Origin: Macrostomum hystrix
Lineage: Eukaryota > Animalia > Platyhelminthes
NCBI GenBank assembly: GCA_950097015.1
Contig: CATNEN010000041.1
Span: forward strand, 806,001-870,000
DNA: 64,000 nucleotides
Direction: 5' to 3'
Below the pieces are notes generated by a model. It was not told the origin of the DNA, searched no databases, and saw nothing but the letters and a program-made list of their open reading frames with translations. Below are positions 1-30,640 of the stretch, in pieces. Position 1 is the first letter of the stretch. Every line of letters starts with the position of its first letter. The translations under genes were made by a program, and so were the position numbers.

Positions 1-1009
1 GAAAATTAAGCCAAGTAGTTTATAATGGATTAAGCTTTTGGATTTTATGACGAGTACAATAATAAAAAAAAACCAACCCTAATTTTCTGGCAGACTTTCG
101 TCCACTTCGTAGAAATTGACTTAAAATGTTCAAATAAAGGAGTAGGTATTTGTGTTTCGTCTCATATAAAGCCTTCATTTTAAGACGAAGCTCTTGTCTA
201 AAGGCAAAAAATGATGGCTAGCGCACCTTGAATTCTTCGGAGCGAACTGACGAACGGAGGTCCTTAAAGAACTTCTCTGACCACTGCAATGTTTCGGAGT
301 GGGCGAGTTACTTTTAATGTGTGCTTACTGTCAGGTGAAGGCATGACAGCTCATCGACTTACCGATGACGCTTCTAGAAGAGCTATGAGCCTGTCATCCC
401 GGTTACAAAAGTACGCCACAATGTGCCGCCTTCTAGTTACCTGCTCCTGTAGAAAGAATGGATCGTAGCGGACGAGAAGCAATGACCAATATTTTGGTCA
501 AGAATTACAAAAGCCTTCAAGGTAGGTCTTTTTGCCCAAAGCGTTAGCGAAAATTTACCATGAGCATCTCAAGAGTTTTCTGCAGCTCGCGGCTGCGCTC
601 AGGGTCTGTCTCCGCTTCGCTCAGGTAGTGCAGTAGGATCCTGTGCAGGCAGCAGTAGACCCTGTCTGACAAGCAGCCAATGCGGTACAGGTGACTGAGG
701 AATCTGGAGTGCAGATGAAGATCTCTGTAAGTTGTTGTGCCATGCTACTTCACCGGTGACAAAGTGCACAGGCGAATTGCAGCTCAACTTACAGAATGCA
801 GTCCCGCTGTTGCAAGAGCATCGACCCATCGCATCCAGAGCATCGACATTCAAACTCCCTTCTGATAACGTCTGTAGCAATCACCTTCGCCCCTGGCTTC
901 GAGCAGGTCAGGTCTGGCTGGTATTCGAATGCGGATCGGCACTGCTGAGCAAGGACTCGAGCCTCTTCGGAGTCTAAGGTCAGCTGCAGACGAAATTAAA
1001 TTCAAACGA

Positions 1010-1132
1010 GCTGCTATAGCCAGACTGCCATAACTATGCTGCTATAGCCAGACTGCCATAACTATGCTGCTATAGCCAGACTGCCATAACTATGCTGCTA
1101 TAGCCAGACTGCCATAACTATGCTGCTATAGC
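1010..1132. repeat. 28-bp minisatellite (gctgctatagccagactgccataactat), ~4 copies, intronic
   Basis: Direct tandem periodicity. Confidence 0.97.
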
Positions 1133-3900
1133 GATATGGTGAGTGGGTGTGTGATATGGTGAGAGGGTGTTAGATATGGTGAGAGGGTGTTAGATATGGT
1201 GAGAGGGTGTTAGATATGGTGAGTGGGTGTGTGATATGGTGAGAGGGTGTGTGATATGGTGAGAGGGTGTTAGATATGGTGAGAGGGTGTTAGATATGGT
1301 GAGAGGGTGTTAGATATGGTGAGTGGGTGTTAGATATGGTGATTGGGTGTTAGATATTGTGAGAGGATGTGTGATATGGTGAGAGGGTGTTAGATATTGT
1401 GAGAGGGTGTTAGATATTGTGAGAGGGTGTTAGATATGGTGAGAGGGTGTTAGATATGGTGAGAGGGTGTTAGATATGGTGAGTGGGTGTGTGATATGGT
1501 GAGAGGGTGTGTGATATGGTGAGAGGGTGTTAGATATGGTGAGAGGGTGTTAGATATGGTGAGAGGGTGTTAGATATGGTGAGTGGGTGTTAGATATGGT
1601 GATTGGGTGTTAGATATTGTGAGAGGATGTGTGATATGGTGAGAGGGTGTTAGATATTGTGAGAGGGTGTTAGATATTGTGAGAGGGTGTTAGATATGGT
1701 GAGAGGGTGTTAGATATTGTGAGAGGGTGTTAGATATTGTGAGAGGGTGTTAGATATTGTGAGAGTGTGTGTGATATGGTGAGAGGGTGTGTGATATGGT
1801 GAGAGGGTGTTAGATATGGTGAGAGGGTGTTAGATATGGTGAGAGGGTGTTAGATATGGTGAGAGGGTGTTAGATATGGTGGAGGGTGTGCGATATGGTG
1901 AGCGGGTGTTAGATATGGTGAGTGGGTGTGTGATATGGTGAGAGGGTGTTAGATATGGTGAGAGGGTGTTAGATATGGTGAGAGGGTGTGTTATATGGTG
2001 AGAGGGTGTTAGATATGGTGAGAGTGTGTGTGATATGGTGAGATGGTGTTAGATATGGTGAGAGGGTGTTAGATATGGTGAGAGGGTGTTAGATATGGTG
2101 AGAGGGTGTTGGATATGGTGAGAGGGTGTTGGATATGGTGAGAGGGTGTTAGATATGGTGAGAGGGTGTTAGATATGGTGAGTGGGTGTTAGATATGGTG
2201 ATTGGGTGTTAGATATTGTGAGAGGATGTGTGATATGGTGAGAGGGTGTTAGATATTGTGAGAGGGTGTTAGATATTGTGAGAGGGTGTTAGATATGGTG
2301 AGAGGGTGTTAGATATGGTGAGAGGGTGTTAGATATGGTGAGTGGGTGTTAGATATGGTGAGAGGGTGTTAGATATTGTGAGAGGGTGTTAGATATTGTG
2401 AGAGGGTGTTAGATATGGTGAGTGGGTGTGTGATATGGTGAGAGGGTGTTAGATATGGTGAGAGGGTGTTAGATATGGTGAGAGGGTGTGTTATATGGTG
2501 AGAGGGTGTTAGATATGGTGAGAGTGTGTGTGATATGGTGAGATGGTGTTAGATATGGTGAGAGGGTGTTAGATATGGTGAGAGGGTGTTAGATATGGTG
2601 AGAGGGTGTTGGATATGGTGAGAGGGTGTTGGATATGGTGAGAGGGTGTTAGATATGGTGAGAGGGTGTTAGATATGGTGAGTGGGTGTTAGATATGGTG
2701 ATTGGGTGTTAGATATTGTGAGAGGATGTGTGATATGGTGAGAGGGTGTTAGATATTGTGAGAGGGTGTTAGATATTGTGAGAGGGTGTTAGATATGGTG
2801 AGAGGGTGTTAGATATGGTGAGAGGGTGTTAGATATGGTGAGTGGGTGTTAGATATGGTGATTGGGTGTTAGATATTGTGAGAGGATGTGTGATATGGTG
2901 AGAGGGTGTTAGATATTGTGAGAGGGTGTTAGATATTGTGAGAGGGTGTTAGATATGGTGAGAGGGTGTTAGATATGGTGAGAGGGTGTTAGATATGGTG
3001 AGTGGGTGTGTGATATGGTGAGAGGGTGTGTGATATGGTGAGAGGGTGTTAGATATGGTGAGAGGGTGTTAGATATGGTGAGAGGGTGTTAGATATGGTG
3101 AGTGGGTGTTAGATATGGTGATTGGGTGTTAGATATTGTGAGAGGATGTGTGATATGGTGAGAGGGTGTTAGATATTGTGAGAGGGTGTTAGATATTGTG
3201 AGAGGGTGTTAGATATGGTGAGAGGGTGTTAGATATTGTGAGAGGGTGTTAGATATTGTGAGAGGGTGTTAGATATTGTGAGAGTGTGTGTGATATGGTG
3301 AGAGGGTGTGTGATATGGTGAGAGGGTGTTAGATATGGTGAGAGGGTGTTAGATATGGTGAGAGGGTGTTAGATATGGTGAGAGGGTGTTAGATATGGTG
3401 AGTGGGTGTGCGATATGGTGAGCGGGTGTTAGATATGGTGAGTGGGTGTGTGATATGGTGAGAGGGTGTTAGATATGGTGAGAGGGTGTTAGATATGGTG
3501 AGAGGGTGTGTTATATGGTGAGAGGGTGTTAGATATGGTGAGAGTGTGTGTGATATGGTGAGAGGGTGTTAGATATTGTGAGAGGATGTGTGATATGGTG
3601 AGAGGGTGTTAGATATGGTGAGAGGGTGTTGGATATGGTGAGAGGGTGTTGGATATGGTGAGAGGGTGTTAGATATGGTGAGAGGGTGTGTGATATGGTG
3701 AGAGGGTGTTAGATATTGTGAGAGGGTGTTAGATATGGTGAGTGGGTGTTAGATATGGTGAGAGGGTGTGTGATATGGTGAGAGTGTGTTAGATATTGTG
3801 AGAGGGTGTTAGATATGGTGAGAGGGTGTGTGATATGGTGAGAATGTGTTAGATATTGTGAGAGGGTGTTAGATATGGTGAGAGGGTGTTAGGTGGTTAG
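1133..3900. repeat. 20-bp minisatellite (gatatggtgagagggtgtta), ~138 copies, intronic
   Basis: Direct tandem periodicity with variant units. Confidence 0.98.
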
Positions 3901-5533
3901 AGAGTATTAGATGCGATAGTGACAAAGTTGGCCTTGACGCGGGACACTTACACCTGGCCGAGAGCAGCAGGATTGCCACAGTTCCGAGGAGGGCTGGAAT
4001 TGAAAAGAAACGGAATTCTAAATAAAATCCGGTGGAATTCGGCTTGAAAGTTGTACTTCTCAACAGCTGAGATAAGCTGCTCGGAAACCAGGCCTGACCA
4101 CTGTAATCATAATATTCAGTGGCATATTTATGATACTATTTCTGCTTCGTCTTTAAAAAAAAAAAAACTCGGACCTTGTGAAGACTCGCATCGCTGTTGA
4201 GGGCTTTCAGTAACTCGTCGCGGCTTTCAGAGGCTTCTCTGGTGAGGCTGATCTTCTGCACCAAAAGTTTTCAGCGAAATTTTACTAGAATTTAGCTCGT
4301 TTGATTCAGATTTTAGAATTAAAATAAATTAATTTTTAACATCCGAACACCAAAATATCGAGTCTTGCAAGCCAAACCCTGTCGGTGTCTTCAGTAGCTC
4401 CTCCATTCTGAACAGTTCTCTTCTTCCTCACTGAAACTGGCGCAGTTGCTTCCATCAGGCCTGAGTTTTCCACCTCTGTTGACATTTCGTCAGGCATCTC
4501 AAGGCCGTCGCTCCACAGGTTCTTGAGCCTTTCCTGGGAGTAGCTGGAAGACATGATGCTTGCTGCTTAGGATTAGAAGCTTTGCTCTTGAAGGTCTTGA
4601 CGCTTGTGTATCGCTTGTCGGAATTCTCAAGGCCACTGCTCAAATCATGCAGCATTAGCTCCTAGTCTCTATGCAGCAAGCTTATTTCCAAGAAATTAGG
4701 CAAGCGCGACTTAAGTAGCTAAGGAATGGATTTCTAAGAAATTATTTGAACTTCAAAGAGAGAAATGTGAGCTGAGGTTGACATCTATGAGCTGACAAGC
4801 CATTGTTTTTTTAAGTACTCAAATTGTACACACAATTGTACACTCAAATTGTATCACACACATAGAGAGTGCTTACAAACAGTGTAATAGTAATAGTAAT
4901 AGTAATAGTAAAACTATTACTGAACTGTGAGCAAGCGCAGCCAGTTCTTTGAGACAGGCAGAAAGCAGCCACTAAGCTCCTATGCCGCAGCCAGTTCACT
5001 CTTGACTGCATTCATCGATTTCTGCTTTATTGCCGGTGGGGCTGCACAGGGGTCGGTAGCAATTCATCGTGCGGTCTTCTATGCGGGCGCAAGTACATTA
5101 TTCAAGAACAGAGGAGGGGTGCAGAATGGTAATGACAATTCGCGTGAGGGATTGTGCATAGAAATGTGAGTACACTAAAGCGGAACTTTCTAACAGTCTT
5201 CAGCTGGTAGTGACGCTCTGATCTACCATTTGAAACTGTTTTCTATTAGGGCCTTTTCTTAGGCCTCAATATCCTTAAAAAATTTACTTTTATTTTGAAA
5301 TTCACAAAGTTTCAATTATTGATTGAAAACATTGCATGAGGAAGTATCCTTGGCTTCCATTTGATTGTTGCTAACAGAACATCCGCTGCAGAAAATTGCA
5401 GCTGCATGCACTCGTGACTCTTGAATACAAAGCAGGAGGATTCGTACCAACAAAACCTAAAATCCCCAAAGGCCAATGAAACAGGTTTAGTCAGCCTCTG
5501 AAACTCCTCTCTGGCGCTTCAAAGCGACATCTC

Positions 5534-6560: not shown

Positions 6561-6665
6561 ATCGATCGACTCGGAATGTTGAATCGCTTGGTCAAAGCTC
6601 CGGTCAGCCGCCTCAGTCTGCTCCGGCGGCTCCGGCTGCAGTCGGTCTTGCTCCGCTGGCAGACC

Positions 6666-7612
6666 TCATGCGGGTTGCCGCTGGTTCGCAAGAGGCAGTG
6701 AGGTGACTGCGAGGAGTGACGAGAAGTCAAATAAAGCTTCTTGGGATCGAAAGCTGAAGATCATCCTGAAGATCGATATCGTTGGACTCGGGTTCAGAAT
6801 CAACGCTGGGTCCATCCAAGTCCTCCATTCGGTATTCGTCGGACATATCAGACAGTGATTCGTCACTTGCCTTGTACCAAGGGCGGTCACTCCGCCAAAT
6901 CCCCAGTCTGCTTCAGAAGTCAGATCCCATTCACAATCCCATTCAGAAGTTCCTTCCACTTTCTTTACCGCTTCCTGAGGCAAAAAGAGCTCCGATCCGT
7001 GACCACACACGCAGAGAGCAACTTTTTTGTCACTGCTGATCGCCTCTAGCCCAAAAAGTCTGGGGTCAAGCAGAGCCACCGCAGCGGCGCCGTCGATAAC
7101 GAAAACTCGTCCTCCTTCGCCTAGCAACCATGGGAGTTTACACTCAACGAAGTGAACTCTGCGCTTCACATTCGCAAAGCTGAGAATGATGAGGTTGAAA
7201 TGCTCATGCCAAGAAATGCTATTGACGAATTGTTCCATGTCGGAGCGGAGAAATTCCAGAGTGACCGGAATCCTTGACGAGATCAAGCTCTTCTTGGTCC
7301 GCAACTGTTCCAAAGGCCACTAGTACAGATCCACACCAGTGCAGTGCACGCTCCGAATACACATGCTGGACTTCTGATCGACAGCAGCAGCTGCACGAAG
7401 GCCAGCAGATCGCTGCCAGGACCTCAGCCTAGAGTCAGCACCTTGTAGTTAGCACCGGCTAGCCAAGATTGCAGACTTCAGCGGCTCCCTCATCAGTTCA
7501 CGAGCTTCCTCGGCAGCTCCTTGTCGGCACAGTCGCTCCGAAAGCTGTTGTCCGCGTAGAATCGCAGGCTGTTCTTTCCGCGGCTCGCCAGCCACTCCCC
7601 GAAAAGCGACAT
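6666..7612 (-). pseudogene. Class I SAM-dependent methyltransferase pseudogene, copy A
   Basis: Minus strand reads VLTLG*GPGSDLLAF...HCTGVDLY*WP...FNLIILSF...LLGEGGRVFVID, aligning with the intact ORF at 18002-19105 (VLSVGCGPGSELLAV...CVGVDKFWWP...FDLVVLSF...LLRTDGVICLID). In-frame stops at 7424-7426 and 7320-7322, plus frameshifts. Confidence 0.8.
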
Positions 7613-9796: not shown

Positions 9797-9873
9797 ATGC
9801 GGCCTCTGAGCTCCACACTGCTTTTGCTTGGCCTGCTGCTTGGGCCCAGCCTCTCGGAGGCCTCATCAGCGCA
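9797..9873 (+). pseudogene. Truncated 5' fragment (signal peptide only) of the PAN-mucin-glycine-rich gene
   Basis: MRPLSSTLLLLGLLLGPSLSEASSA is identical to the start at 28498, then runs into the 56-bp repeat and a TGA. Confidence 0.9.
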
Positions 9874-11016
9874 TTGATTATGAGCACACCTAGTAGGAGT
9901 GAGTTTCTTCAGTTCTTCAATGATGCGCATTGGTTATGAGCACACCTAGTAGGAGTGAGTTTCTTCAGTTCTTCAATGATGCGCATTGGTTATGAGCACA
10001 CCTAGTGGGAGTGAGTTTCTTCAGTTCTTCAATGATGCGCATTGGTTATGAGCACACCTAGTAGGAGTGAGTTTCTTCAGTTCTTCAATGATGCGCATTG
10101 GTTATGAGCACACCTAGTAGGAGTGAGTTTCTTCAGTTCTTCAATGATGCGCATTGGTTATGAGCACACCTAGTAGGAGTGAGTTTCTTCAGTTCTTCAA
10201 TGATGCGCATTGGTTATGAGCACACCTAGTAGGAGTGAGTTTCTTCAGTTCTTCAATGATGCGCATTGGTTATGAGCACACCTAGTAGGAGTGAGTTTCT
10301 TCAGTTCTTCAATGATGCGCATTGGTTATGAGCACACCTAGTAGGAGTGAGTTTCTTCAGTTCTTCAATGATGCGCATTGGTTATGAGCACACCTAGTAG
10401 GAGTGAGTTTCTTCAGTTCTTCAATGATGCGCATTGGTTATGAGCACACCTAGTAGGAGTGAGTTTCTTCAGTTCTTCAATGATGCGCATTGGTTATGAG
10501 CACACCTAGTAGGAGTGAGTTTCTTCAGTTCTTCAATGATGCGCATTGATTATGAGCACACCTAGTAGGAGTGAGTTTCTTCAGTTCTTCAATGATGCGC
10601 ATTGATTATGAGCACACCTAGTAGGAGTGAGTTTCTTCAGTTCTTCAATGATGCGCATTGATTATGAGCACACCTAGTAGGAGTGAGTTTCTTCAGTTCT
10701 TCAATGATGCGCATTGGTTATGAGCACACCTAGTAGGAGTGAGTTTCTTCAGTTCTTCAATGATGCGCATTGATTATGAGCACACCTAGTAGGAGTGAGT
10801 TTCTTCAGTTCTTCAATGATGCGCATTGGTTATGAGCACACCTAGTAGGAGTGAGTTTCTTTAGTTCTTCAATGATGCGCATTGATTATGAGCACACCTA
10901 GTAGGAGTGAGTTTCTTCAGTTCTTCAATGATGCGCATTGATTATGAGCACACCTAGTAGGAGTGAGTTTCTTCAGTTCTTCAATGATGCGCATTGGTTA
11001 TGAGCACACCTAGTAG
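9869..11016. repeat. 56-bp minisatellite (gcgcattggttatgagcacacctagtaggagtgagtttcttcagttcttcaatgat), ~20 copies
   Basis: Direct tandem periodicity, very homogeneous, no unique spacers. Confidence 0.98.
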
Positions 11017-17497: not shown

Positions 17498-20400
17498 TCA
17501 ATCCTTCTCGATGCCCTGGACCTCAAGTTCTGGTTGGAGATCATTGTGCTGACGCACGAGCAGCCAGCTCCCTGGTGGCCATTGATCAAGGCGAAAGCGA
17601 AGAAACTGTTCTGAATCACACAGTTGCTGTTGGCTGCCATCATCGAGCTGCACAGTCTCACAGGACCACGTCTGATTTGCTTCTCCTCTTGTGCTTTGTT
17701 TCAAAGTATCGGCCACCTCTTGGGCTAGCTGACTTGTGTCACATTCGTCCTTTTGGTTGTACAGAGTCTGAGCTGCCTTCACGAAGGCCGTGAGTATTAT
17801 TGAGGCCGGAAAGTTGGTGCTTCTCACAACGGAAAAGACTTTTTTGTCCACAGTTCCGCCTCGAGAACTGTAAAAAGCTTGAAACATCTCTTCTTGATCT
17901 CTTGTCTCGTCTCGTCTCGTCTCGCCCTAGAAAGCACAGTGTCGTAAATTGATACGACAATTAATAAGGTTTCATCTGTTTATTAATATCACAATGAAAT
18001 GTCATCTTACCCTGAGAGGCTGCTTTCGGTACTCGAAGCAAACTTTGGCTGGGAATGGGGCTTCACCAGTCTGCATATTTTGGTCCGTCCGTCCCGGCTG
18101 CGAGTCAATGCCGTCTGCGAGCTCTTCTCCGCGGAAGTTTTCGTTCTGAACTGTCGGCTTAGCTTCTGCTGGCTGACGATCGGTAGAGAGCCACACGGCT
18201 ATGGGGTGAAACCCTTCGTCCATCAGAGAAAGCACGGGGGAGACGTAGTTGTCGATAAGACATATAACACCGTCGGTCCGGAGAAGCTGAGCAAGGTCCG
18301 AGAAAAAGGCCCCGTTATTTTCCCCACCAGCGCCCACAAAGCTGAGAACAACAAGGTCGAATGCCCCAGGCTTCATATGACAGTCCTGCATGTTACTGTG
18401 CACAAACACGCTCTTCACTAGGGCTTGGGACTCGCGTGGTTGTGTCGCACGGCTTTGCCGAATCGGCTCTTTTTTGTTCAGAAGAATGAGGCTCTGCTTG
18501 AACAGGAATGCTGCCTTCGGCCACCAGAACTTGTCAACACCAACGCAATTGAGCGGGCGGGCTCCATGGTCCTGGTCAGCCCAGATCTCCATCACGGCCA
18601 GTAGCTCGCTGCCTGGACCGCAGCCCACAGACAGGACGCTGAAAGGTTCTCGAGCTGCTTCTTGGGTACTCATGCTCAAATCGAGCTGCTTCTTTATTAT
18701 TGCTTTGAATGAAGCTTTAAACAATTCCACCTTCTGTGGCATGTGTTTCTTTATATACCCATTAAGCATATCCTGGGATTCGTAGTAGAAAACCCTATCC
18801 TTGCACACCGCTTCTTCCCAGAGTTCCAGTGCCTGCGATTCTTCGGCAGTGAGGCTACGATTTTCGAACAGCGATTTCGAACAACCTTTAAGTAGACTGT
18901 CCAGAGTGGCCTGCAGCACCTGCTGCCACTGCTTCAGGTCTCCATCTACTGCCGCTGACCTCAGCATCCAGGAAATCAGCTCCACAACCAGCTCTTGGAG
19001 TGCAGGATTTTGCCTGCAAGCTAGCTCAATGAACCTAGGTTGTAATAAACAATAGCTCCTGAATGTTTTGTCAGATTGTGTAGTTTCCATGATCGAGTAA
19101 CTCACTTGAGGCAGTCCTTACGCTCAAGTCCGTCTTCCGCGACCCCATCTCCTGCAACAGCAGCATCGCTCCAGAGTCCCTGGCCAGTGAAGAATTCCCT
19201 GCACTGGGTCGCCAGATTCTCGATTCCTTCTGGCTTTGGATATAGCTGAAAATTAAGCCAAGTAGTTTATAATGGATTAAGCTTTTGGATTTTATGACGA
19301 GTACAATAATAAAAAAAAACCAACCCTAATTTTCTGGCAGACTTTCGTCCACTTCGTAGAAATTGACTTAAAATGTTCAAATAAAGGAGTAGGTATTTGT
19401 GTTTCGTCTCATATAAAGCCTTCATTTTAAGACGAAGCTCTTGTCTAAAGGCAAAAAATGATGGCTAGCGCACCTTGAATTCTTCGGAGCGAACTGACGA
19501 ACGGAGGTCCTTAAAGAACTTCTCTGACCACTGCAATGTTTCGGAGTGGGCGAGTTACTTTTAATGTGTGCTTACTGTCAGGTGAAGGCATGACAGCTCA
19601 TCGACTTACCGATGACGCTTCTAGAAGAGCTATGAGCCTGTCATCCCGGTTACAAAAGTACGCCACAATGTGCCGCCTTCTAGTTACCTGCTCCTGTAGA
19701 AAGAATGGATCGTAGCGGACGAGAAGCAATGACCAATATTTTGGTCAAGAATTACAAAAACCTTCAAGGTAGGTCTTTTTGCCCAAAGCGTTAGCGAAAA
19801 TTTACCATGAGCATCTCAAGAGTTTTCTGCAGCTCGCGGCTGCGCTCAGGGTCTGTCTCCGCTGCGCTCAGGTAGTGCAGTAGGATCCTGTGCAGGCAGC
19901 AGTAGACCCTGTCTGACAAGCAGCCAATGCGGTACAGGTGACTGAGGAATCTGGAGTGCAGATGAAGATCTCTGTAAGTTGTTGTGCCATGCTACTTCAC
20001 CGGTGACAAAGTGCACAGGCGAATTGCAGCTCAACTTACAGAATGCAGTCCCGCTGTTGCCTCGACCCATCGCATCCAGAGCATCGACATTCAAACTCCC
20101 TTCTGATAACGTCTGTAGCAATCACCTTCGCCCCTGGCTTCGAGCAGGTCAGGTCTGGCTGGTAATCGAATGCGGATCGGCACTGCTGAGCAAGGACTCG
20201 AGCCTCTTCGGAGTCTAAGGTCAGCTGCAGACGAAATTAAATTCAAACGAGCTGCTATAGCCAGACTGCCATAACTATGCTGCTATAGCCAGACTGCCAT
20301 AACTATGCTGCTATAGCCAGACTGCCATAACTATGCTGCTATAGCCAGACTGCCATAACTATGCTGCTATAGCCAGACTGCCATAACTATGCTGCTATAG

Positions 20401-23400
20401 CCAGACTGCCATAACTATGCTGCTATAGCCAGACTGCCATAACTATGCTGCTATAGCCAGACTGCCATAACTATGCTGCTATAGCCAGACTGCCATAACT
20501 ATGCTGCTATAGCCAGACTGCCATAACTATGCTGCTATAGCCAGACTGCCATAACTATGCTGCTATAGCCAGACTGCCATAACTATGCTGCTATAGCCAG
20601 ACTGCCATAACTATGCTGCTATAGCCAGACTGCCATAACTATGCTGCTGTAGCCAGACTGCCATAACTATGCTGCTATAGCCAGACTGCCATAACTATGC
20701 TGCTATAGCCAGACTGCCATAACTATGCTGCTATAGCCAGACTGCCATAACTATGCTGCTATAGCCAGACTGCCATAACTATGCTGCTATAGCCAGACTG
20801 CCATAACTATGCTGCTATAGCCAGACTGCCATAACTATGCTGCTATAGCCAGACTGCCATAACTATGCTGCTATAGCCAGACTGCCTTAACTATGCTGCT
20901 ATAGCCAGACTGCCATAACTATGCTGCTATAGCCAGACTGCCTTAACTATGCTGCTATAGCCAGACTGCCATAACTATGCTGCTATAGCCAGACTGCCAT
21001 AACTATGCTGCTATAGCCAGACTGCCATAACTATGCTGCTATAGCCAGACTGCCATAACTATGCTGCTATAGCCAGACTGCCTTAACTATGCTGCTATAG
21101 CCAGACTGCCATAACTATGCTGCTGTAGCCAGACTGCCATAACTATGCTGCTATAGCCAGACTGCCATAACTATGCTGCTATAGCCAGACTGCCATAACT
21201 ATGCTGCTATAGCCAGACTGCCATAACTATGCTGCTATAGCCAGACTGCCATAACTATGCTGCTATAGCCAGACTGCCATAACTATGCTGCTATAGCCAG
21301 ACTGCCATAACTATGCTGCTATAGCCAGACTGCCATAACTATGCTGCTATAGCCAGACTGCCATAACTATGCTGCTATAGCCAGACTGCCATAACTATGC
21401 TGCTATAGCCAGACTGCCATAACTATGCTGCTATAGCCAGACTGCCATTACTATGCCGCTATAGCCAGACTGCCATAACTATGCTGCTATAGCGATATGG
21501 TGAGTGGGTGTGTGATATGGTGAGAGGGTGTTAGATATGGTGAGAGGGTGTTAGATATGGTGAGAGGGTGTTAGATATGGTGAGAGGGTGTGTGATATGG
21601 TGAGAGGGTGTTAGATATTGTGAGAGGGTGTTAGATATTGTGAGAGGGTGTTAGATATGGTGAGAGGGTGTTAGATATGGTGAGAGGGTGTGTGATATGG
21701 TGAGAGGGTGTTAGATATGGTGAGAGGGTGTTAGATATTGTGAGAGGGTGTTAGATATGGTGAGAGGGTGTTAGATATTGTGAGAGGGTGTTAGATATGG
21801 TGAGCGGGTGTTAGATTTCGTGAGAGGGTGTTAGATATGGTGAGAGGGTATGGTGAGAGGGTGTTAGATTTCGTGAGAGGGTGTTAGATATGGTGAGTGG
21901 GTGTTAGATATGGTGAGAGGGTGTGTGATATGGTGAGAGGGTGTTAGATATGGTGAGAGGGTGTTAGATATTGTGAGAGTGTGTGTGATATGTTGAGAGG
22001 GTGTGTGATATGGTGAGAGGGTGTTAGATATGGTGAGAGGGTGTTAGATTTCGTGAGAGGGTGTTCGATATGGTGAGCGGGTGTTAGATATGGTGAGCGG
22101 GTGTTAGATTTCGTGAGAGGGTGTTAGATATGGTGAGAGGGTATGGTGAGAGGGTGTTAGATTTCGTGAGAGGGTGTTAGATATGGTGAGTGGGTGTTAG
22201 ATATGGTGAGAGGGTGTGTGATATGGTGAGAGGGTGTTAGATATGGTGAGAGGGTGTTAGATATTGTGAGAGTGTGTGTGATATGTTGAGAGGGTGTGTG
22301 ATATGGTGAGAGGGTGTTAGATATGGTGAGAGGGTGTTAGATTTCGTGAGAGGGTGTTCGATATGGTGAGCGGGTGTTAGATATGGTGAGCGGGTGTTAG
22401 ATTTCGTGAGAGGGTGTTAGATATGGTGAGAGGGTATGGTGAGAGGGTGTTAGATTTCGTGAGAGGGTGTTAGATATGGTGAGTGGGTGTTAGATATGGT
22501 GAGAGGGTGTGTGATATGGTGAGAGGGTGTTAGATATGGTGAGAGGGTGTTAGATATTGTGAGAGTGTGTGTGATATGTTGAGAGGGTGTTAGATATGGT
22601 GAGAGGGTGTTAGATTTCGTGAGAGGGTGTTCGATATGGTGAGCGGGTGTTAGATATGGTGAGAGGGTGTTAGATATGGTGAGCGGGTGTTAGATATGTT
22701 GAGAGGGTGTTAGATGGTTAGAGAGTATTAGATGCGATAGTGACAAAGTTGGCCTTGACGCGGGACACTTACACCTGGCCGAGAGCAGCAGGATTGCCAC
22801 AGTTCCGAGGAGGGCTGGAATTGAGAAAAAACAGAATTCTAAATAAAGACCGGTGGAATTCGGCTTGAGAATGTCGCTACTGCAGCCTGACCCCCATACC
22901 TGAAAGTTGTACTTCTCAACAGCTGAGATAAGCTGCTCGGAAACCAGGCCTGACCACTGTAATCATAATATTCAGTGGCATATATATGATACTATTTCTG
23001 CATCGTCTTTAAAAAAAAAAAAAACTCGGACCTTGTGAAGACTCGCATCGCTGTTGAGGGCCTTCAGTAACTCGTCGCGGCTTTCACAGGCTTCTCTGGT
23101 GCGGCTGATCTTCTGCACCAAAAGTTTTCAGCGAAATTTTACTAGAATTTAGCTCGTTTGATTCAGATTTTAGAACTAAAATAAATTAATTTTTAACATC
23201 CGAACACCAAAATATCGAGTCTTGCAAGCCAAACCCTGTCGGTGTCTTCAGTAGCTCCTCCATTCTGAACAGGAGGATTCGTACCAACAAAACCTAAAAT
23301 CCCCAAAGGCCAACAGTTCTCTTCTTCCTCACTGAAACTGGCGTAGTTGCTTCCATCAGGCCTGAGTTTTCCACCTTTGTTGTCATTTCGTCAGGCATCT

Positions 23401-23455
23401 GAAGGCCGTCGCTCCACAGGTTCTTGAGCCTTTCCTGGGAGTAGCTGGAAGACAT
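17498..23455 (-). CDS. 11-exon gene (~820 aa): MIF4G-like helical N-terminus plus class I SAM methyltransferase. Exons 23455-23235, 23112-23032, 22956-22900, 22814-22773, 20224-20040, 19971-19806, 19693-19610, 19530-19474, 19245-19106, 19058 (or 19034)-18011, 17926-17498. Exon 1 carries a 44-bp insertion
   Basis: Ten GT-AG introns with matching phases give one continuous frame once the insertion is discounted. Motif I VLSVGCGPGS, CVGVD, FDLVVLSF and LLRTDGVICLID identify the methyltransferase fold. The MIF4G call is by eye. Confidence 0.75.
20251..21493. repeat. 28-bp minisatellite, ~44 copies (copy B)
   Basis: Direct tandem periodicity. Confidence 0.98.
21494..22720. repeat. 20-bp minisatellite, ~61 copies, with a 293-bp higher-order repeat (copy B)
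   Basis: A shortened gggtatgg unit recurs at 21846, 22139 and 22432. Confidence 0.95.
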
Positions 23456-24434
23456 GATGCTTGCTGCTTAGGATTAGAAGCTTTGCTCTTGAAGGTCTTG
23501 ACGCTTGTGTATCGCTTGTCGGAATTCTCAAGGTCACTGCTCAAATCATGCAGCATTAGCTCCTAGTCTCTATGCAGCAAGCTTATTTCCAAGAAATTAG
23601 GCAAGCGCGACTTAAGTAGCTACGAAATGGATTTCTAAGAAATTATTTGAACTTCAAAGAGAGAAATGTGAGCTGAGGTTGACATCTATGAGCTGACAAG
23701 CCATTGTTTTTTAAGTACTCAAATTGTACACACAATTGTACACTCAAATTGTATCACACACATAGAGAGTGCTTGCAAACAGTGTAATAGTAATAGTAAT
23801 AGTAATAGTAAAACTATTACTGAACTGTGAGCAAGCGCAGCCAGTTCTTTGAGACAGGCAGAAAGCAGCAACTAAGCTCCTATGCCGCAGCCAGTTCACT
23901 CTGGACTGCATTCATCGATTTCTGTTTTATTGCCGGTGGGGCTGCACAGGGGTCGGTAGCAATTCATCGTGCGGTCTTCTATGAGGGCGCAAGTACATTA
24001 TTCAAGAACAGAGGAGGGGTGCAGAATGGTAATGACAATTCGCGTGAGGGATTGTGCATAGAAATGTGAGCACACTAAAGCGGAACTTTCTAACAGTCTT
24101 CAGCTGGTAGTGACGCTCTGATCTACCATTTGAAACAGTTTTCTATTAGGGCCTTTTCTTAGGCCTCAATATCCTTAAAAAAAATTTACTTTTATTTTGA
24201 AATTCACAAAGTTTCAATTATTGATTGAAAACATTGCATGAGGAAGTATCCTTGGCTTCCATTTGATTGTTGCTAACAGAACATCCGCTGCAGAAAATTG
24301 CAGCTGCATGCCTCGTGACTCTTGAATACAAACCAGGAGGATTCGTACCAACAAAACCTAAAATCCCCAAAGGCCAATGAAACAGGTTTAGTCAGCCTCT
24401 GAAACTCCTCTCTGGCGCTTCAAAGCGACATCTC

Positions 24435-24935
24435 GGATCACCTGAGATACAGTCAGCAGGGATCACCTGAGATACAGTCAGCAGGGATCACCTGGGATAC
24501 AGTCAGCAGGGATCACCTGAGATACAGTCAGCAGGGATCACCTGAGATACAGTCAGCAGGATCACCTGAGATACAGTCAGCAGGGATCACCTGAGATACA
24601 GTCAGCAGGGATCACCTGGGATACAGTCAGCAGGGATCACCTGAGATACAGTCTGCAGGGATCACCTGAGATACAGTCTGCAGGGATCACCTGAGATACA
24701 GTCAGCAGGGATCACCTGAGATACAGTCTGCAGGGATCACCTGGGATACAGTCAGCAGGGATCACCTGAGATACAGTCAGCAGGGATCACCTGAGATACA
24801 GTCTGCAGGGATCACCTGAGATACAGTCAGCAGGGATCACCTGAGATACAGTCAGCAGGGATCACCTGAGATACAGTCAGCAGGGATCACCTGAGATACA
24901 GTCAGCAGGGATCACCTGAGATACAGTCAGCAGGT
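24435..24935. repeat. 25-bp minisatellite, ~20 copies (copy B)
   Basis: Direct tandem periodicity. Confidence 0.97.
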
Positions 24936-25384
24936 CGCCTGATGGTCCGCTACAATTTTATAATAAATCTCATCGAAAGGCGAGAACCCAAGCGCTGAAG
25001 AAAAATAACTGTATGGATAAAGAATGAAGGAAATGTCATGAGGGCTAGAATGCACTCATCTAGGAACAAAATCTACACTACCGAGGTTCAGCATAAAGTT
25101 TATGCAAATTCTTTAAGTTAACAAGGGTGTCGTTTATAAAAAGAGAGACAAAATAAGAAAAAAGATTTGGTCGAATGCATTCTAAACTGCCTTTCACCCG
25201 ATCATATTAAAGTGACCTGGATTTTATGTCGACATGGAACTCCCCGATCTGCAGCAGATTGACATGGAACTCCCCGATCATCGATCGACACGGAATGTTG
25301 AATCGCTTGGTCAAAGCTCCGGTCAGCCGCTTCAGTCTGCTCCGGCGGCTCCGGCTGCGGTTGGTCTTGCTCCGCTGGCAGACC

Positions 25385-26322
25385 TCATGCGGGTTGCCGC
25401 TGGTTCGCAAGAGGCAGTGAGGTGACTGCGAGGAGTGACGAGAAGTCAAATAAAGCTTCTTGGGATCGAAAGCTAAAGATCATCCTGAAGATCGATATCG
25501 TTGGACTCGGGTTCAGAATCAACGCTGGGTCCATCCAAGTCCTCCATTCGGTATTCGTCGGACATATCAGACAGTGATTCGTCACTTGCCCTGTACCAAG
25601 GGCGGTCACTCCGCCAAATCCCCAGTCTGCTTCAGAAGTCAGATCCCATTCACAATCCCATTCAGAAGTTCCTTCCACTTTCTCTACCGCTTCCTGAGGC
25701 AAAAAGAGCTCCGGTCCGTGACCACACGGTCCGTGTCACTGCTGACCGCCTCTAGCCCAAAAAGTCTGGGGTCAAGCAGAGCCACCGCAGCGGCGCCGTC
25801 GATAACGAAGACTCGTCCTCCTTCGCCTAGCAACCATGGGATTTTACACTCAACGAAGTGAAATCTGCGCTTCACATCCGCAAAGCTGAGAATGATGAGG
25901 TTGAAATGATCATGCCAAGAAATGCTATTGACGAATTGTTCCATGTCGGAGCGGAGAAATTCCAGAGTGACCGGAATCCTTGACGAGATCAAGGTCTTCT
26001 TGGTCCGCAGCTGTTCCAAAGGCCATTAGTACAGATCCACACCAGTGCAGTGCACGCTCCGAATACACAGGCTGGACTTCTGATCGGCATTCTGCAGCAG
26101 CTGCACGAAGGCCAGCAGATCGCTGCCAGGACCTCAGCCTAGAGTCAGCACCTTGTAGTTAGCACCGGCTAGCCAAGATTGCAGACTTCAGCGGCTCCCT
26201 CATCAGTTCACGCGCTTCCTCGGCAGCTCCTTGTCGGCACAGTCGCTCCGAAAGCTCTTGTCCGCGTAGAAGCGCAGGCTGTTCTTTCCGCGGCTCGCCA
26301 GCCACTCCCCGAAAAGCGACAT
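25385..26322 (-). pseudogene. Class I SAM methyltransferase pseudogene, copy B
   Basis: VLTLG*GPGSDLLAFVQLLQNADQ...HCTGVDLY*WP...FNLIILSF; stops at 26134-26136 and 26026-26028 are at the same codons as in copy A. Confidence 0.8.
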
Positions 26323-28497
26323 TTCTATTGCAGCTCATTCACAATGGCTGCAACTGATTTTAATGTTAAAATGTTACCACAGCCCCCTGCTCAACTGAGT
26401 TGTTTTCTACAGCCCCCTACCTACAGCTTTAGTATTTTACTCTATACGGTGTACTCCAGACTCCAGACTGAACACCAGGTCGTGATTTATGTTGTGCAAT
26501 TGTTAAGCATTGTTTAATGAATACTGAATTTTTTGTAGTTTTACAGTAGCCATAAAAGCATTGTTTCCCTGTACAAATTGTACAATTAGCTTACCTCTGT
26601 GAGAAAATTAACAGTTCGTTTCATTTTCACTTTTTTCTTCAAGTCAGAGAAAATGTTTTTCGATAAACTACTCTAAGTAGTACAATTTGCTTGAGGTGGC
26701 CTTCAGAACTAGCATTGTGTGCTATCATTCAGAGTGCAGTAAGGGTAGTTAAATCGCCACCTGAACTCTCGAACTAATGGCTGCTTGAGCTGCTGTCACA
26801 CAACAGGGCGAAAAGATTGCCCCGAGTGAAGGGCGGGAAAGCCTGACCGGCTAACAATGAGACTGGTTCATTGTTCATTGGCTGCAGACATGTTCCATTG
26901 TTCGACACACGACCGTCAAGTAGACAGAACCAACTGCTGGGGATATTCATGGAAAAATAAGATCACAGGAGGCCACGAGGCATTGTTGTGAGAGTTCACG
27001 GGAAGAAAAACAGCAAAAAATGGTCAGGGTACTGGTTCTACGCGCGCGTCCCGTCGTGGGACGACGAAAATAAGAAGCGCCTTGTTGCCTATTTTTTAAT
27101 TCACAGCTTGTAATTAGAAAGAGAAAATGCATTTTGCCTGATTTGGTTTAAAAATAGTTCCATGGGTCTGAGTTTTAGACATGCTTTCGGTGATGATTTG
27201 CGAGTATGTGTCCAGAAACATAACTAGCATTTTAGGACTCTAGCATTTTTTCTTGCCCAGCCCGGTAGTTTTCAGTCTGCTCGTTTGCGGAAATTAGAAA
27301 ACAGAACAGGGAAATCGATTTTCATTGCTGGTACGCACTTTCACTGATATTGACATGGACGTGGGTGAATGAGGGACCAATGATCGGTTATAAGTGCTTG
27401 AATGTCTATGGTCACGAGTGCGCGCAATCACGATTGCATTCATGATCCTCGTAGATGATCTTGCCCATAGACTAAAGACTATAGGGCATCATACGATGCA
27501 ACTGTCCTCGATGGCAATGTTACTCTTTTCCATAGACTGATCTTAGTCATTTCTTAGCTTTTTGTTAAACGCACTCAAATATTTTGTTCGAAATTGTTGC
27601 TTTCTAGAGACCATAGACAAAGGCGCGATTCCTTAGGTTTGTACTTTAAGTGTCTAGTTAAGCGAAGTGTACTTTACCGAACTGTAACCTTCGTTTTTTC
27701 TGGACTATTGATTGCAGTCTGAGGGGATGGCCAGTAGAATAAAACTTCGATACGAAGCCCAACTGAGTCCTTTATTAGAGACTAAAGACTCGCCTGTCGG
27801 ATGCATGTTTGCAGTCGTTGCGCATTCAGTTGTGCCACGTGAACTGTTCTGTTGATTCAGTCGCCGGGGGCACCCAATTAAGTTTTCATACTGCAAACAG
27901 GCGGTGCTAGCAGCTGGGCATATCTGATGAAGCCCGGGCTGCTGCTGCTGCTGCTGCTGCTGAAAGTGCACCGCTTGGCGAGAAGTCGATAATGGCATCC
28001 AGCAATAAAATTTCTGACAAGCGGGCGCAGTAAGGCAGCTTATTTGTACACAGTAAGGCAGCTCTCAAAATGATCCTTGATTGAATTCGAAAAGCACAAG
28101 GCTCATTAGCAATGGGTTATGTGGAAGCGCATAACAATTGAAAGTACAGAAACTTTCACGAGAAAGCTATCTAAAAATGATCTATACATCCATGCTAAAC
28201 CAAACTCAGCTGGATAAAAAGTCGGCTGGTTGCCCTAGGAAACATCAAACTTTGTCAGGTGCAAGAAATAATGCAAAAAAAACGTTTCAAAAATTTAGAC
28301 CTTTTATTACCATTGTGCATTAGAGCTCGGAGGCGGCAGGAGAAGAATCAGGACGGGCTAAAAATAGAGCCAGCGTCTGAGACAATGGGATCCTCATAAT
28401 AGCCAATGCCACACCATGCGGGGCAGTCTATGTAAATGGAAGTTTCTCCCAAAACAGAGAGGCTCAACTTTTCCAGTCTAGGAACTCTCTGAACCGG

Positions 28498-30640
28498 ATG
28501 CGGCCTCTGAGCTCCACACTGCTTTTGCTTGGCCTGCTGCTTGGGCCCAGCCTCTCGGAGGCCTCATCAGCGCAGACAAGCTGTGTGGCCTCTAGGATGC
28601 GCCTGCAGCCGGTCCGAGGACTCTGCATCTCCAACACCTCTGCCGCAGGCGTCCGTCCGAGGCCTTCAGTCAACGCAGCTGCCTGCGCCCTACTCTGTGC
28701 AGTCGAGGCCACGTGCTCGGTCGCCGAATTCGACAGCGAAGCCTCCGTCTGCAGAATGGGAACCGCCTGCGACTTGCGCAACCTCTGGACGGCTGGCACC
28801 GGCGACAGCGGCTGCAACACTTGGCTGGTAGAGGACCGGACCGCCTGCCACAATAGCATTGCAGATGCAACTCGGAGCACAACAGCCACAACTCCGACAA
28901 CAACAACAAGTCCGACAACAACAACAAAAACTCCGACAACAACAACAACTCCGACAACAACAACTCCGACAACAACAACAACAACTACGACAACAACAAC
29001 AACAACAACTCCGACAACAACAACTCCGACAACAACAACTCCAACAACTTCAACAACAGCCACAACTACAACTCCGACCACAACTACAACTCCGACCACA
29101 ACTACAACTCCGACCACAACTACAACTCCGACCACAACTACAACTCCGACCACAACTACAACTCCGACCACAACTACCACAACTCCGACCACAACTACCA
29201 CAACTCCGACCACAACAACCACAACTCCGACCACAACAACCACAACTCCGACCACAACTACAACTCCGACCACAACAACCACAACTCCGACCACAACTAC
29301 CACAACTCCGACCACAACTACAACTCCGACCACAACTACAACTCCGACCACAACTACCACAACTCCGACTACAACTACCACAACTCCGACCACAACTACA
29401 ACTCCGACCACAACTACCACAACTCCGACCACAACAACGACAACTCCGACCACAACTACCACAACTCCGACCACAACAACCACAACTCCGACCACAACTA
29501 CCACAACTCCGACCACAACTACAACTCCGACCACAACTACCACAACTCCGACCACAACTACTACAACTCCGACCACAACTACAACAGCAGCTAAAACAAC
29601 TCCAACAACAACTTCAACAATAACGACTCCATCAACAACCACAACAACTTCGACATTGACTACCCCGAAATCAACTGTGCCGACCCCTACAACGCCATCA
29701 GCGGAAATAACATTTCGTAAGAGCCAAACTTTCCAGTTTTCTTGCATATTTAGATTTGTGGTTGGCGTATTTAAAGCGCTTTAATAAAGTGGCCCACTAG
29801 ACAGTAGGAGAAATCAGACCTCTGATTAAAGATCCGGCCCACTCCACAGCCGCTGGAAGCTCTGCACTCCAGACCTACATGCCTCCCCTACCGGGCGCCT
29901 GCTATAGAATTCGTGCGTGGGGCGCCCGAGGCGGCTCAAACGGTGGGTTCAATTCGGGTGGCAACGGCGCCTTCAAGGAGGCAAAATTCGTGCTTAGCGG
30001 TGTCCAGCTAACAGTGGTTGTTGGTGAGGCCGGCAGCGACGCCAGTAACAGTAATGGTGGCGCGGGCGGTGGAGGCGGCAGCTTTGTGTATGAGGCCTCG
30101 TCGACTTCGCTGCTCCTAGCAGCCGGTGGAGGTGGCGGAGCGGCCGAATCCTCAGCGGGGGTGGCGGGCGCCATCGGGCTGGATGGAGCCGCCTCCGCAA
30201 ACGTCGACAGCTACCAGGGCAGCGGCGGCACTGCTGGGAACGGCGCGCCCGCCGCTTCAAATACCTGCTGCGGTGGCAAAGGCGGCGGTGGCGCGGGCTG
30301 GCTGAGCAACGGCGGCTCCCAGAGCGGAGGCACCAACGGCGGTGGTGGCGCCTCACGCACAAGCGGCTGGGGCGGCGGCACCTCCTCGGGCAACGCGGGC
30401 CCCGGCGGCTTCGGTGGCGGTGGCGGCGGAGGAAAAAAGACCAGCAGCGCTGGAGGAGGGGGCGGCGGCGGCGGCTACTCGGGAGGCGGCGCTAGCGGCA
30501 GCGGTGGCGAGGGAGGCGGCGGCGGTAGCAGCTTCGCCGCAGCCGGGGCCGCAGGCATCCAGGGAACTGTCGGTGGAAACAGCCAGGCCGCCGGGCAAGT
30601 GAGCATCCAGTTGATCGGGCCGGCGTCGCTGTGTGCCTGA
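28498..30640 (+). CDS. Secreted protein (~669 aa): signal peptide, PAN/apple-like Cys domain, Thr/Pro mucin stalk, ALK/LTK-type glycine-rich domain; exons 28498-29716 and 29850-30640
   Basis: Hydrophobic N-terminus; CALLC...C...F......C pattern; PT5-6 repeats; phase-1 GTAAG...CAG intron joins the two ORFs in frame; YRIRAWGARGG...LTVVVGEAG...GGGGGSFV...LLLAAGGGGG matches the ALK/LTK Gly-rich domain pattern. Confidence 0.85.

What the first reader, a model, noticed from the sequence alone, without database searches (positions are those of the whole stretch)
17498..23455. Hidden 11-exon gene apparently fusing a MIF4G-like domain to a SAM methyltransferase
Seen: the methyltransferase ORF (18002-19105) is not standalone. 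Small upstream exons and a downstream exon join it via ten phase-compatible GT-AG introns into a ~820-aa frame. Exons 3-8 give WSGLVSEQLISAVEKYNF...ARVLAQQCRSAF...HSRFLSHLYRIGCLSDRV...LQKTLEMLM...WSEKFFKDL. By eye these follow, in order, the eIF4G MIF4G helices (GVIDLIFEKAISEPNF...FRKLLLNRCQKEF...NIKFIGELFKLKMLTEAI...LECLCRLL...MDQYFNQM). Known: MIF4G domains are scaffolds in eIF4G, CBP80, UPF2, CWC22, CTIF and SLIP1; I know of none fused to a class I methyltransferase. Inference: a possibly undescribed cap-, RNA- or translation-linked methyltransferase, here in a locally expanded family.
Basis: partly seen in the sequence, partly recalled or inferred. Interest (0 to 1): 0.75.

Follow-up and report, generated by a model that had tools for sequence, protein, structure and literature searches.

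The report
Flatworm methyltransferase gene, MIF4G unproven
The hidden multi-exon gene is real and encodes a Macrostomum-only SAM methyltransferase with an internally duplicated helical front part, but that part resembles a MIF4G domain only weakly, so the proposed fusion remains unproven.

Summary
On the minus strand, 17498-23455, small GT-AG-bounded exons join the methyltransferase ORF in one open frame. Every exon matches, in order, an RNA-seq-derived Macrostomum lignano protein (BOX15_Mlig012580g1; 51% identity in the enzyme part), and the exon lengths match.

That gives 12 exons and about 809 aa.

The genome fits the M. hystrix assembly. In 1.84 billion representative proteins the only relative is the M. 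lignano cluster.

Exon 10 folds as a class I SAM methyltransferase with intact cofactor motifs and no specific subfamily.

The front part is two tandem copies of a ~140-aa helical module (hhalign 94.9%).

MIF4G is not established. Pfam, PDB-sequence and BLAST tests are negative. Profile-profile scores are sub-threshold (P 0.0004-0.014, probability 3-34%) and confined to helices 3a-4a. However, the protein-language-model search puts MIF4G-labelled clusters first among named clusters (0.89).

I put true MIF4G-like homology at about 0.3.

The scan met this gene before as its 98-99% identical tandem copy (s1-286163). It is an ordinary lineage-specific enzyme unless the fold is confirmed.

The parts
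23333..23455 (-). Exon 1 with the start codon (41 aa).
   Evidence: ATG at 23455 and donor GTGAGG after 23333. M. lignano exon 1 encodes 40 aa. 16 of 41 residues are identical to P0003 1-41.
23208..23264 (-). Possible 57-nt cassette exon (19 aa). Unverified.
   Evidence: AG/GT-bounded, phase 0, and the same length as the 19-aa cassette exon of M. lignano P0003, but with no real sequence similarity (score 15).
23032..23112 (-). Exon 2 (27 aa)
   Evidence: GT-AG borders, phase 0. 13 of 27 residues identical to P0003 60-86, z 11.8.
22900..22956 (-). Exon 3 (19 aa), start of helical module A
   Evidence: GT-AG borders. It matches the 19-aa exon that P0003 and P0005 have and the P0001 isoform skips.
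22773..22814 (-). Exon 4 (14 aa)
   Evidence: The donor GTAAGT after 22773 gives phase 0. It matches P0003 106-116.
20251..22733 (.). Two minisatellite arrays that fill intron 4: 28 bp x 44 copies and 20 bp x 63 copies
   Evidence: Tandem Repeats Finder. The matching M. lignano intron is about 85 nt.
20040..20224 (-). Exon 5 (185 nt). It carries the helix-3a-like motif.
   Evidence: One continuous exon; the apparent 13-nt gap is too short to be an intron. It aligns to P0003 121-168. Its best match in the MIF4G profile is at helix 3a, but this is not significant alone.
19806..19971 (-). Exon 6 (166 nt). It carries the RFIGEL-like motif.
   Evidence: 26 of 55 residues identical to P0003, z 15. 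hhalign against the MIF4G alignment A3 gives score 18.5, P 0.031. The peptide occurs only in the two tandem copies in the genome.
19610..19693 (-). Exon 7 (28 aa)
   Evidence: GT-AG borders, phase 0. z 8.4 against P0001.
19474..19530 (-). Exon 8 (19 aa), start of helical module B and a paralogue of exon 3
19325..19366 (-).
   Evidence: Acceptor ttttaag, donor GTTGGT, phase 0. 7 of 14 residues identical to P0003 268-281. It is also present in copy A at 78-119.
19106..19245 (-). Exon 9 (140 nt)
   Evidence: The donor GTGAGT begins at 19105. 14 of 20 residues identical to P0001 322-341, z 15.6.
18011..19034 (-). Exon 10: the end of module B plus the class I SAM methyltransferase core
17498..17926 (-). 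Exon 11: a 142-aa C-terminal region of unknown fold, plus the stop codon
   Evidence: Phase 0 junction. 35 of 111 residues identical to P0001 648-760, z 13. The peptide occurs only in the two tandem copies.
1..4554 (-). 5' two-thirds of tandem copy A of the same gene. Exons 1-5 lie at 4432-4554, 4175-4255, 4044-4100, 3952-3993 and 795-983. The remaining exons lie below 795 and beyond the window start.
   Evidence: tblastn shows 90-100% identity. The segmental duplication is shown.

Best explanation
This is a real protein-coding gene of a Macrostomum flatworm; the assembly statistics fit M. hystrix. It has about 12 exons and encodes about 809 residues.

The protein has three parts:
- an all-helical N-terminal region, made of a short leader plus two tandem copies (A and B) of a ~140-residue helical module;
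- a class I (Rossmann-fold) SAM-dependent methyltransferase core with intact cofactor-binding motifs;
- a ~140-residue C-terminal region of unknown fold.

The most likely mechanism is as follows. The core binds S-adenosylmethionine and transfers the methyl group to a substrate that is still unknown. The duplicated helical modules and the C-terminal region serve as lineage-specific surfaces for binding a substrate or a partner.

Shown here: the gene structure, the orthology, the methyltransferase fold and motifs, and the internal duplication.
Inferred: catalytic activity and a scaffold role for the helical modules.
Not established: that the helical modules are MIF4G domains. The similarity is limited to one or two helices and stays below every family threshold.

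The gene sits in a recent ~19-kb tandem duplication and belongs to a methyltransferase family expanded in this genome.
For: - Gene model and phases.
- Collinear, significant per-exon matches to M. lignano P0001/P0003, and the same exon lengths in the M. lignano locus L017.
- M. lignano Mlig gene models are built from RNA-seq (StringTie/TACO/TBONE/TransDecoder): PMC5730564.
- The only library relative among 1.84e9 representatives is the M. lignano cluster.
- G000 has 220 Mb in 42 contigs, as does the published M. hystrix assembly.
- Internal duplication: hhalign of module A against module B gives probability 94.9%, E 4.5e-8, over 127 columns. Smith-Waterman on P0003 gives z 6.0, with 0 of 1000 shuffles reaching it. 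The two modules start with matching 57-nt and 42-nt exon pairs.
- Tandem copy A is intact.
Against: - I had no transcript data for this species, so the splicing of exons 1-4 across the 2.5-kb minisatellite intron rests on conservation with M. lignano.
- The window's own exon 10 is below the Pfam cut-off (23.0 against 27 bits).
- Weak but consistent MIF4G signals mean that 'lineage-specific helical module' may understate what the N-terminal region is.
Confidence: 0.62

Rival explanations
1. The N-terminal region is a very divergent MIF4G-type HEAT-repeat scaffold, possibly two tandem MIF4G-like modules as in UPF2 or CBP80 (that comparison is from memory). It is fused to a class I methyltransferase, so the enzyme would be recruited to a DEAD-box helicase, a cap-binding complex or another RNA-protein complex and would methylate RNA or a translation or mRNP protein.
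For: - The ESM Atlas feature search with P0003 60-345, named clusters only, ranks a cluster that is 20% MIF4G first (0.89, 177 of 256 shared features) and a cluster that is 11% MIF4G third. A MIF4G+MA3 cluster appears at rank 26.
- hhalign of the two-species N-terminal profile against a 12-sequence MIF4G profile scores 32.3 (P 0.001, probability 21.6%). The reversed query scores 14.1. Sixty column shuffles have mean 13.7 and maximum 19.7.
- Module A alone reaches probability 33.5%.
- Genuine divergent MIF4G domains of the same genome, used as leave-one-out controls, score 15.7-38.8.
- The tool's own hhalign, P0003 against A3, gives a collinear 113-column alignment over helices 2a-4a (score 29.5, P 0.0089).
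- The helix-3a motif scores z 3.4 on its own at the collinear position.
- MA3 and W2 control profiles give nothing.
Against: - PF02854 gives no hit at E<=10 on P0001 or P0003, and none in the window when the genome was scanned.
- phmmer against PDB sequences finds no MIF4G chain at E<=10.
- BLASTP against real MIF4G genes of the same genome finds nothing.
- HH probabilities never exceed 34%.
- The signal sits in about 26-45 residues. The C-terminal half of the domain scores z 0.2, and module B shows no signal (P 0.23-0.25).
- Adding module B to the profile lowers the score.
- An Atlas score under 0.9 is, by the tool's own calibration, a lead only.
- The single-sequence AF2 model was unusable (pLDDT 40).
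Confidence: 0.3
2. The model joins what are really separate or dead units. The upstream exons belong to another transcript (flatworm genes are often cut by spliced-leader trans-splicing), or the locus is a decaying duplicate that makes no protein.
For: - There is no transcript evidence for this species in hand.
- M. lignano models of this locus differ from one another: P0006 starts in mid-module A, and P0001 and P0007 are fused to an upstream gene.
- Intron 4 is swollen by 2.5 kb of minisatellites.
Against: - All 12 exons keep an open frame, GT-AG borders and compatible phases in both tandem copies.
- The GenBank M. lignano model P0003, built from RNA-seq, spans the first exon to the last in one 726-aa product with the same exon lengths.
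- Exon peptides are 32-51% identical across species with no frame disruption.
Confidence: 0.06

Closest known systems
Macrostomum lignano BOX15_Mlig012580g1 (PAA65732.1; UniProt A0A267EYB4 and A0A1I8FYA5), an uncharacterised 'Methyltransf_25/methyltransferase domain-containing protein'
   Same: Ortholog. It has the same collinear architecture: leader, two helical modules, methyltransferase core and C-terminal region. The exon lengths and order are the same. Identity is 51% in the enzyme core, about 42% in the N-terminal part and about 32% in the C-terminal part.
   Different: It comes from a different species. It has a 19-aa cassette exon with no clear counterpart here. Its intron 4 equivalent is about 85 nt instead of 2.5 kb. 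No function has been assigned to it.
Generic class I SAM-dependent methyltransferases (Pfam Methyltransf_23/11/25). Structural neighbours include SABATH carboxyl methyltransferases (6c8s, 2eg5), CheR (5ftw), GtmA/TmtA (5jgk, 5egp), Bud23 (4qtu), CARNMT1 (5yf1), NTM1 (7d8d) and RNMT (8q8g).
   Same: Seven-stranded Rossmann-like fold, a GxGxG motif I, an acidic residue at the end of strand 2, and a helical cap in front of the core.
MIF4G domain (PF02854) of eIF4G, CWC22, UPF2 and NOM1-type proteins
   Same: All-helical. There is a local match to the helix 3b/4a signature (RFIGEL...C..LL type) and, more weakly, to helix 3a, in the same order and with similar spacing. The nearest named clusters in protein-language-model feature space are MIF4G-labelled.
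   Different: It fails the Pfam model. There is no signal for helices 4b-5b or for repeat 1. The internal period is about 140 residues (a two-module duplication), not a recognisable set of five ~40-residue HEAT hairpins. No partner-binding residues could be checked.
Trypanosoma brucei EIF4E5-EIF4G1 complex, which includes a partner protein carrying a methyltransferase domain (PMC4105752, seen; details from memory)
   Same: It is a precedent for a MIF4G scaffold and a methyltransferase-domain protein working in one complex.
   Different: There the two are separate polypeptides, and the partner is a cap-formation-type enzyme. I saw only the search listing and did not read the paper.

Membership tests
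MIF4G domain (PF02854) | Match to the Pfam MIF4G model at or above the gathering score (30.8 bits) | tested here: not met
   There is no PF02854 hit at E<=1 on P0001 or at E<=10 on P0003 and window exons 5 and 6. The six-frame scan of the whole genome at E<=10 found 14 MIF4G places, none of them in the window. The exons are short, which limits the six-frame test.
MIF4G domain (PF02854) | Profile-profile homology to MIF4G families over most of the domain | tested here: inconclusive
   hhalign gives probability 1.6-34% and P 0.0004-0.03. Confident columns cover only helices 3a-4a. The score is above reversed and shuffled controls and inside the range of genuine divergent MIF4G controls.
MIF4G domain (PF02854) | Fold: five antiparallel helical hairpins (HEAT-like) forming a right-handed solenoid | tested here: inconclusive
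   AF2 on P0003 without an alignment gave pLDDT 40.3 and pTM 0.24. Only the secondary structure (all helices over residues 1-402) is usable. Only two diverged orthologues exist, so no deep alignment could be built.
MIF4G domain (PF02854) | Binding of a DEAD-box helicase or other known MIF4G partner | not testable with these tools
   Needs a pull-down or co-immunoprecipitation.
Class I SAM-dependent methyltransferase (Methyltransf_23, PF13489, and clan) | Match to a Pfam class I methyltransferase model above the cut-off | tested here: met
   Met for the ortholog P0003 (28.7 bits against a 27-bit cut-off). The window's exon 10 itself scores 23.0 bits, below the cut-off, with four further sub-threshold methyltransferase families.
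Class I SAM-dependent methyltransferase (Methyltransf_23, PF13489, and clan) | Cofactor motifs: glycine-rich motif I and an acidic residue at the end of strand 2 | tested here: met
   G137, C138, G139, G141 and G165, V166, D167 are invariant in the 11-sequence family alignment A4. They lie at strand 1 and strand 2 of the model.
Class I SAM-dependent methyltransferase (Methyltransf_23, PF13489, and clan) | Seven-stranded Rossmann-like fold | tested here: met
Class I SAM-dependent methyltransferase (Methyltransf_23, PF13489, and clan) | SAM binding and methyl transfer | not testable with these tools
   Needs recombinant protein.

The most novel reading that the evidence does not exclude
The duplicated N-terminal helical modules are true, very divergent MIF4G-type HEAT domains. 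It would be a genus-restricted enzyme that is brought to an mRNP, helicase or translation complex and methylates RNA or protein there.
Probability: 0.3. Interest if true: 0.6.

Novelty: new member of a known kind. Interest (0 to 1): 0.33.

Why it matters
As it stands, this is a lineage-specific, fast-evolving class I methyltransferase with accessory regions of unknown fold. Its ortholog is already in the databases as an uncharacterised protein. That is useful for annotating the M. hystrix genome but not surprising.

It would matter more if the helical modules turn out to be MIF4G-like. A scaffold domain known for recruiting DEAD-box helicases and cap-binding complexes, fused to a methyltransferase, would point to a new way of targeting methylation to mRNPs. 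It would also give a simple handle, pull-down of the partner, for finding the substrate.

The internal duplication of a ~140-residue module, with its exon pair preserved, is a tidy example of domain growth by exon-block duplication.

Tried and rejected
1. The word search with exon 10 found nothing, because full-length relatives fall outside its length window.
2. P0002, the second hit of the representative search, is a repeat protein that shares only a short GY..KHMP-like word. I rejected it as spurious.
3. My first exon model had a 13-nt 'intron' inside exon 5 and the wrong donor for exon 4. Both broke the frame and were corrected.
4. MAFFT alignment of the exon fragments to P0003 scattered the fragments (A2). 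It was not used for folding. In the sandbox the exon rows were placed one by one instead.
5. AF2 on P0003 alone gave pLDDT 40, so no fold search was run on that model.
6. The last word search, meant to collect many MIF4G sequences, returned only five, so the MIF4G profile stayed thin (Neff about 3-4).
7. A parallel shuffle run was killed by the sandbox and a -norealign run timed out. The shuffles were repeated serially.
8. Merging modules A and B into one profile did not raise the MIF4G score.
9. The profile of the methyltransferase family against PDB sequences gave only motif-I-level hits (YcgJ, RNMT, BamL; E >= 0.014). I did not take the RNMT hit as evidence for a cap link.
10. A full-text search for Mlig012580 found no paper.
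11. Divergence between the two tandem copies is too low (0.3-0.4%) to test for selection.
All searches used single exons by reference or the M. lignano ortholog as the full-length proxy.

Full report
**What is in the sequence**

I rebuilt the model from the raw sequence.

Two of my first borders were wrong and had to be fixed. Exon 4 uses the GTAAGT donor after 22773. Exon 5 is a single 185-nt exon. Intron 4 (2548 nt) is filled by two minisatellites, 28 bp x 44 copies and 20 bp x 63 copies.

Exons were used one at a time by reference. The full-length orthologous protein from the database served as the proxy for the whole product.

**Is the model more than chance?**

A HMMER search of 1.84 billion representative proteins with exon 10 found one true relative, P0001 (766 aa, E 8e-59, 51% identity). 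The match lies at residues 377-627 of that protein, so it sits inside a much longer protein. A second hit, P0002, is a repeat protein and spurious.

P0001 is a Macrostomum lignano protein. Its 90% cluster holds the GenBank models BOX15_Mlig012580g1, g2 and g4.

Every exon peptide of the window aligns to this protein in the same order. Shuffle z-scores run from 4.5 to 100, with exon 5 weaker at 2.7. Exons 3 and 4 are absent from the P0001 isoform but present in P0003 and P0005.

Mapping P0003 back onto its own genomic locus L017 gives exons of 40, 19, 27, 19, about 15, 50 and 52 aa, then about 14 aa, a long exon and 115 aa. The lengths and order match the window.

M. lignano 'Mlig' gene models are built from RNA-seq with StringTie, TACO, TBONE and TransDecoder (PMC5730564). 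In that species, therefore, the upstream exons and the methyltransferase exon are joined in one mRNA.

- Exon 1 most likely runs to 23333 (41 aa against 40 aa in M. lignano).
- The corrected model has 12 exons and 809 aa.
- A 57-nt cassette at 23264-23208 is possible but unsupported.

**Organism and genomic setting**

The assembly has 220,453,370 bases in 42 contigs. These are the figures published for Macrostomum hystrix (PMC10468722).

The gene lies in a tandem segmental duplication with an offset of about 19 kb. Window 1-9873 matches 19248-28574 at about 98-99% identity.

Copy A has all exons intact. Exons 1-5 are in the window at 4554-795, and the remaining exons lie at lower coordinates, running past the window start into L001. 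The 3' halves of the two copies differ by 0.3-0.4% in exons and introns alike, which is too little to test for selection. Copy A is what the scan examined earlier as s1-286163.

Exon 6 and exon 11 peptides occur nowhere else in the genome. More distant methyltransferase paralogues (25-31% identity, core only) lie on the same contig at about 767-783 kb and on other contigs. This confirms a locally expanded family.

**The enzyme part**

Pfam gives Methyltransf_23 at 28.7 bits (cut-off 27) on the ortholog and 23.0 bits on the window's exon 10. Methyltransf_11, 25, 31 and 34 are sub-threshold.

An alignment of exon 10, the ortholog and nine paralogous ORFs (A4) shows these invariant positions:
- motif I (G137, C138, G139, G141);
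- G165, V166, D167 at the end of strand 2;
- D226 at strand 4;
- D261, N262 after strand 5;
- W72, K78 and Y93 in the helical cap.

AF2 with this alignment gave pLDDT 72.6 and pTM 0.71, with the canonical seven strands. Foldseek found at least 500 PDB matches at E<=0.001; the listed ones are methyltransferases apart from the SpnF cyclase.

The family profile against PDB sequences gave only motif-I-level hits at E >= 0.014.

**The N-terminal part: what it is**

The single-sequence AF2 model of P0003 is unusable for tertiary structure (pLDDT 40). It does predict helices throughout residues 1-402.

A new result is an internal duplication.
- P0003 residues about 86-230 (window exons 3-7) are homologous to residues about 248-380 (exons 8, 8b, 9 and the start of exon 10).
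- Smith-Waterman gives z 6.0, with 0 of 1000 shuffles reaching it.
- Profile-profile comparison gives probability 94.9%, E 4.5e-8, over 127 columns.
- Both modules begin with a 57-nt exon followed by a 42-nt exon, so the duplicated block included its exon structure.

**The MIF4G question**

Negative results:
- No PF02854 hit on P0001 or P0003 at E<=1 and E<=10.
- The PF02854 scan of the whole genome at E<=10 found 14 genuine MIF4G places (eIF4G-, UPF2- and CWC22-like by my reading of the ORFs) but none in the window.
- phmmer against all PDB sequences at E<=10 found no MIF4G chain.
- BLASTP of P0003 against two genuine MIF4G ORFs of the same genome found nothing.

Signals in favour:
- The ESM Atlas feature search with the N-terminal part of P0003 placed a cluster that is 20% MIF4G at rank 5 overall (0.88).
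- Restricted to named clusters, that cluster was first (0.89, 177 shared features). A cluster that is 11% MIF4G was third, and a MIF4G+MA3 cluster was at rank 26. By the tool's own calibration, scores under 0.9 are leads only.
- I built a MIF4G profile from seven ORFs of this genome plus five database proteins. I compared it with a two-species profile of the N-terminal region, in which each window exon is a separate row.
- That comparison gave score 32.3, P 0.001, probability 21.6%, over 26 columns at P0003 166-191.

Controls:
- The reversed query scored 14.1. Sixty column shuffles had mean 13.7, sd 2.3 and maximum 19.7.
- Genuine divergent MIF4G domains, left out of the profile and tested as single sequences, scored 15.7-38.8.
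- MA3 and W2 profiles scored 11.6-13.8.

Further runs:
- The tool's own hhalign gave P0003 against A3 a score of 29.5, P 0.0089, probability 4.5%, over 113 collinear columns.
- Window exon 6 alone scored 18.5, P 0.031.
- Exon 5 alone placed its best match at helix 3a, but this was not significant.
- Splitting the domain showed where the signal lies: core z 8.7, N-flank (helix 3a) z 3.4, C-flank z 0.2, and mismatched halves z 0-0.5.
- Module B has no signal, and merging it into the profile lowers the score slightly.

**Weighing the evidence**

It covers roughly 45 residues and fails every accepted family threshold.

The language-model result is partly independent, but it is below the tool's own line.

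I therefore put true MIF4G-type homology at about 0.3. The earlier follow-up on copy A said that nothing supports MIF4G. I agree that the assignment is not established, but I find weak, reproducible support that keeps it open.

**Mechanism, as far as it can be stated**

Shown: one gene, a class I methyltransferase fold with an intact SAM site, two duplicated helical modules, and a private C-terminal region.

Inferred: the core transfers a methyl group from SAM to an unknown acceptor, and the helical modules and C-terminal region provide binding surfaces for a substrate or partner.

The rapid divergence between the two Macrostomum species (about 42% identity in the N-terminal part, 51% in the core, 32% in the C-terminal part) and the restriction to this genus argue for a lineage-specific role rather than a core translation function.

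**Novelty**

The ortholog is already deposited as an uncharacterised methyltransferase-domain protein. I found no paper on it. I file this gene as a new member of a known kind, a class I methyltransferase with lineage-specific accessory regions. The MIF4G fusion is the open novel case.

Noticed in passing
window 1-9873 and 19248-28574: A tandem segmental duplication with an offset of about 19 kb and 98-99% identity. It carries this gene, a second degenerate methyltransferase-like gene and several minisatellites. It could also be an assembly duplication of haplotypes; I did not test that.
   Followed up: partly
window 25792-26310 (-) and 7176-7459 (-): A second, distant methyltransferase paralogue in each duplicated unit (about 34% identity to P0001 433-606). 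The copy at 25792-26310 has 4 TGA and 1 TAA inside the match, and the IDN motif reads IDG. It may be a pseudogene or split by introns.
   Followed up: no
G000 C11:6079464-6079820, C1:14635976-14636332 and at least 12 further places (L022, L023): A methyltransferase-like fragment (about 30% identity to P0001 440-555, with one in-frame TAG) sits in a dispersed repeat. Two sampled loci share several kb at 94-98% identity, including internal tandem repeats. It may be a mobile element carrying a dead copy of this enzyme family.
   Followed up: partly
window 28498-29784 (+): A 428-aa ORF with a signal-peptide-like start, a Cys-containing head and a long Thr/Pro repeat. It looks like a secreted mucin-type protein. 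The complementary strand carries a mirror ORF of Val/Gly repeats.
   Followed up: no
window 5534-6217, 6311-6560, 9869-11016, 24435-24934, 37481-37910, 38854-39634, 39964-40528, 41994-42452: Many further minisatellite arrays (offsets between copies run from about 20 to 71 bp) at high copy identity. The window is unusually rich in them.
   Followed up: no
P0001, P0007 and P0004 (M. lignano database models): The UniProt models P0001 and P0007 carry 78 and about 316 extra N-terminal residues. In P0007 these begin with the same residues as the neighbouring 178-aa protein P0004. These models probably fuse two genes of one trans-spliced transcription unit. The GenBank model P0003 starts at the methionine that matches the window's exon 1.
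   Followed up: partly
G000 C7:8588533-8703918: Four tandem eIF4G-like MIF4G exons lie within about 115 kb (PF02854 scores 63-66 bits each). This suggests a local expansion of an eIF4G-type gene in this genome.
   Followed up: no
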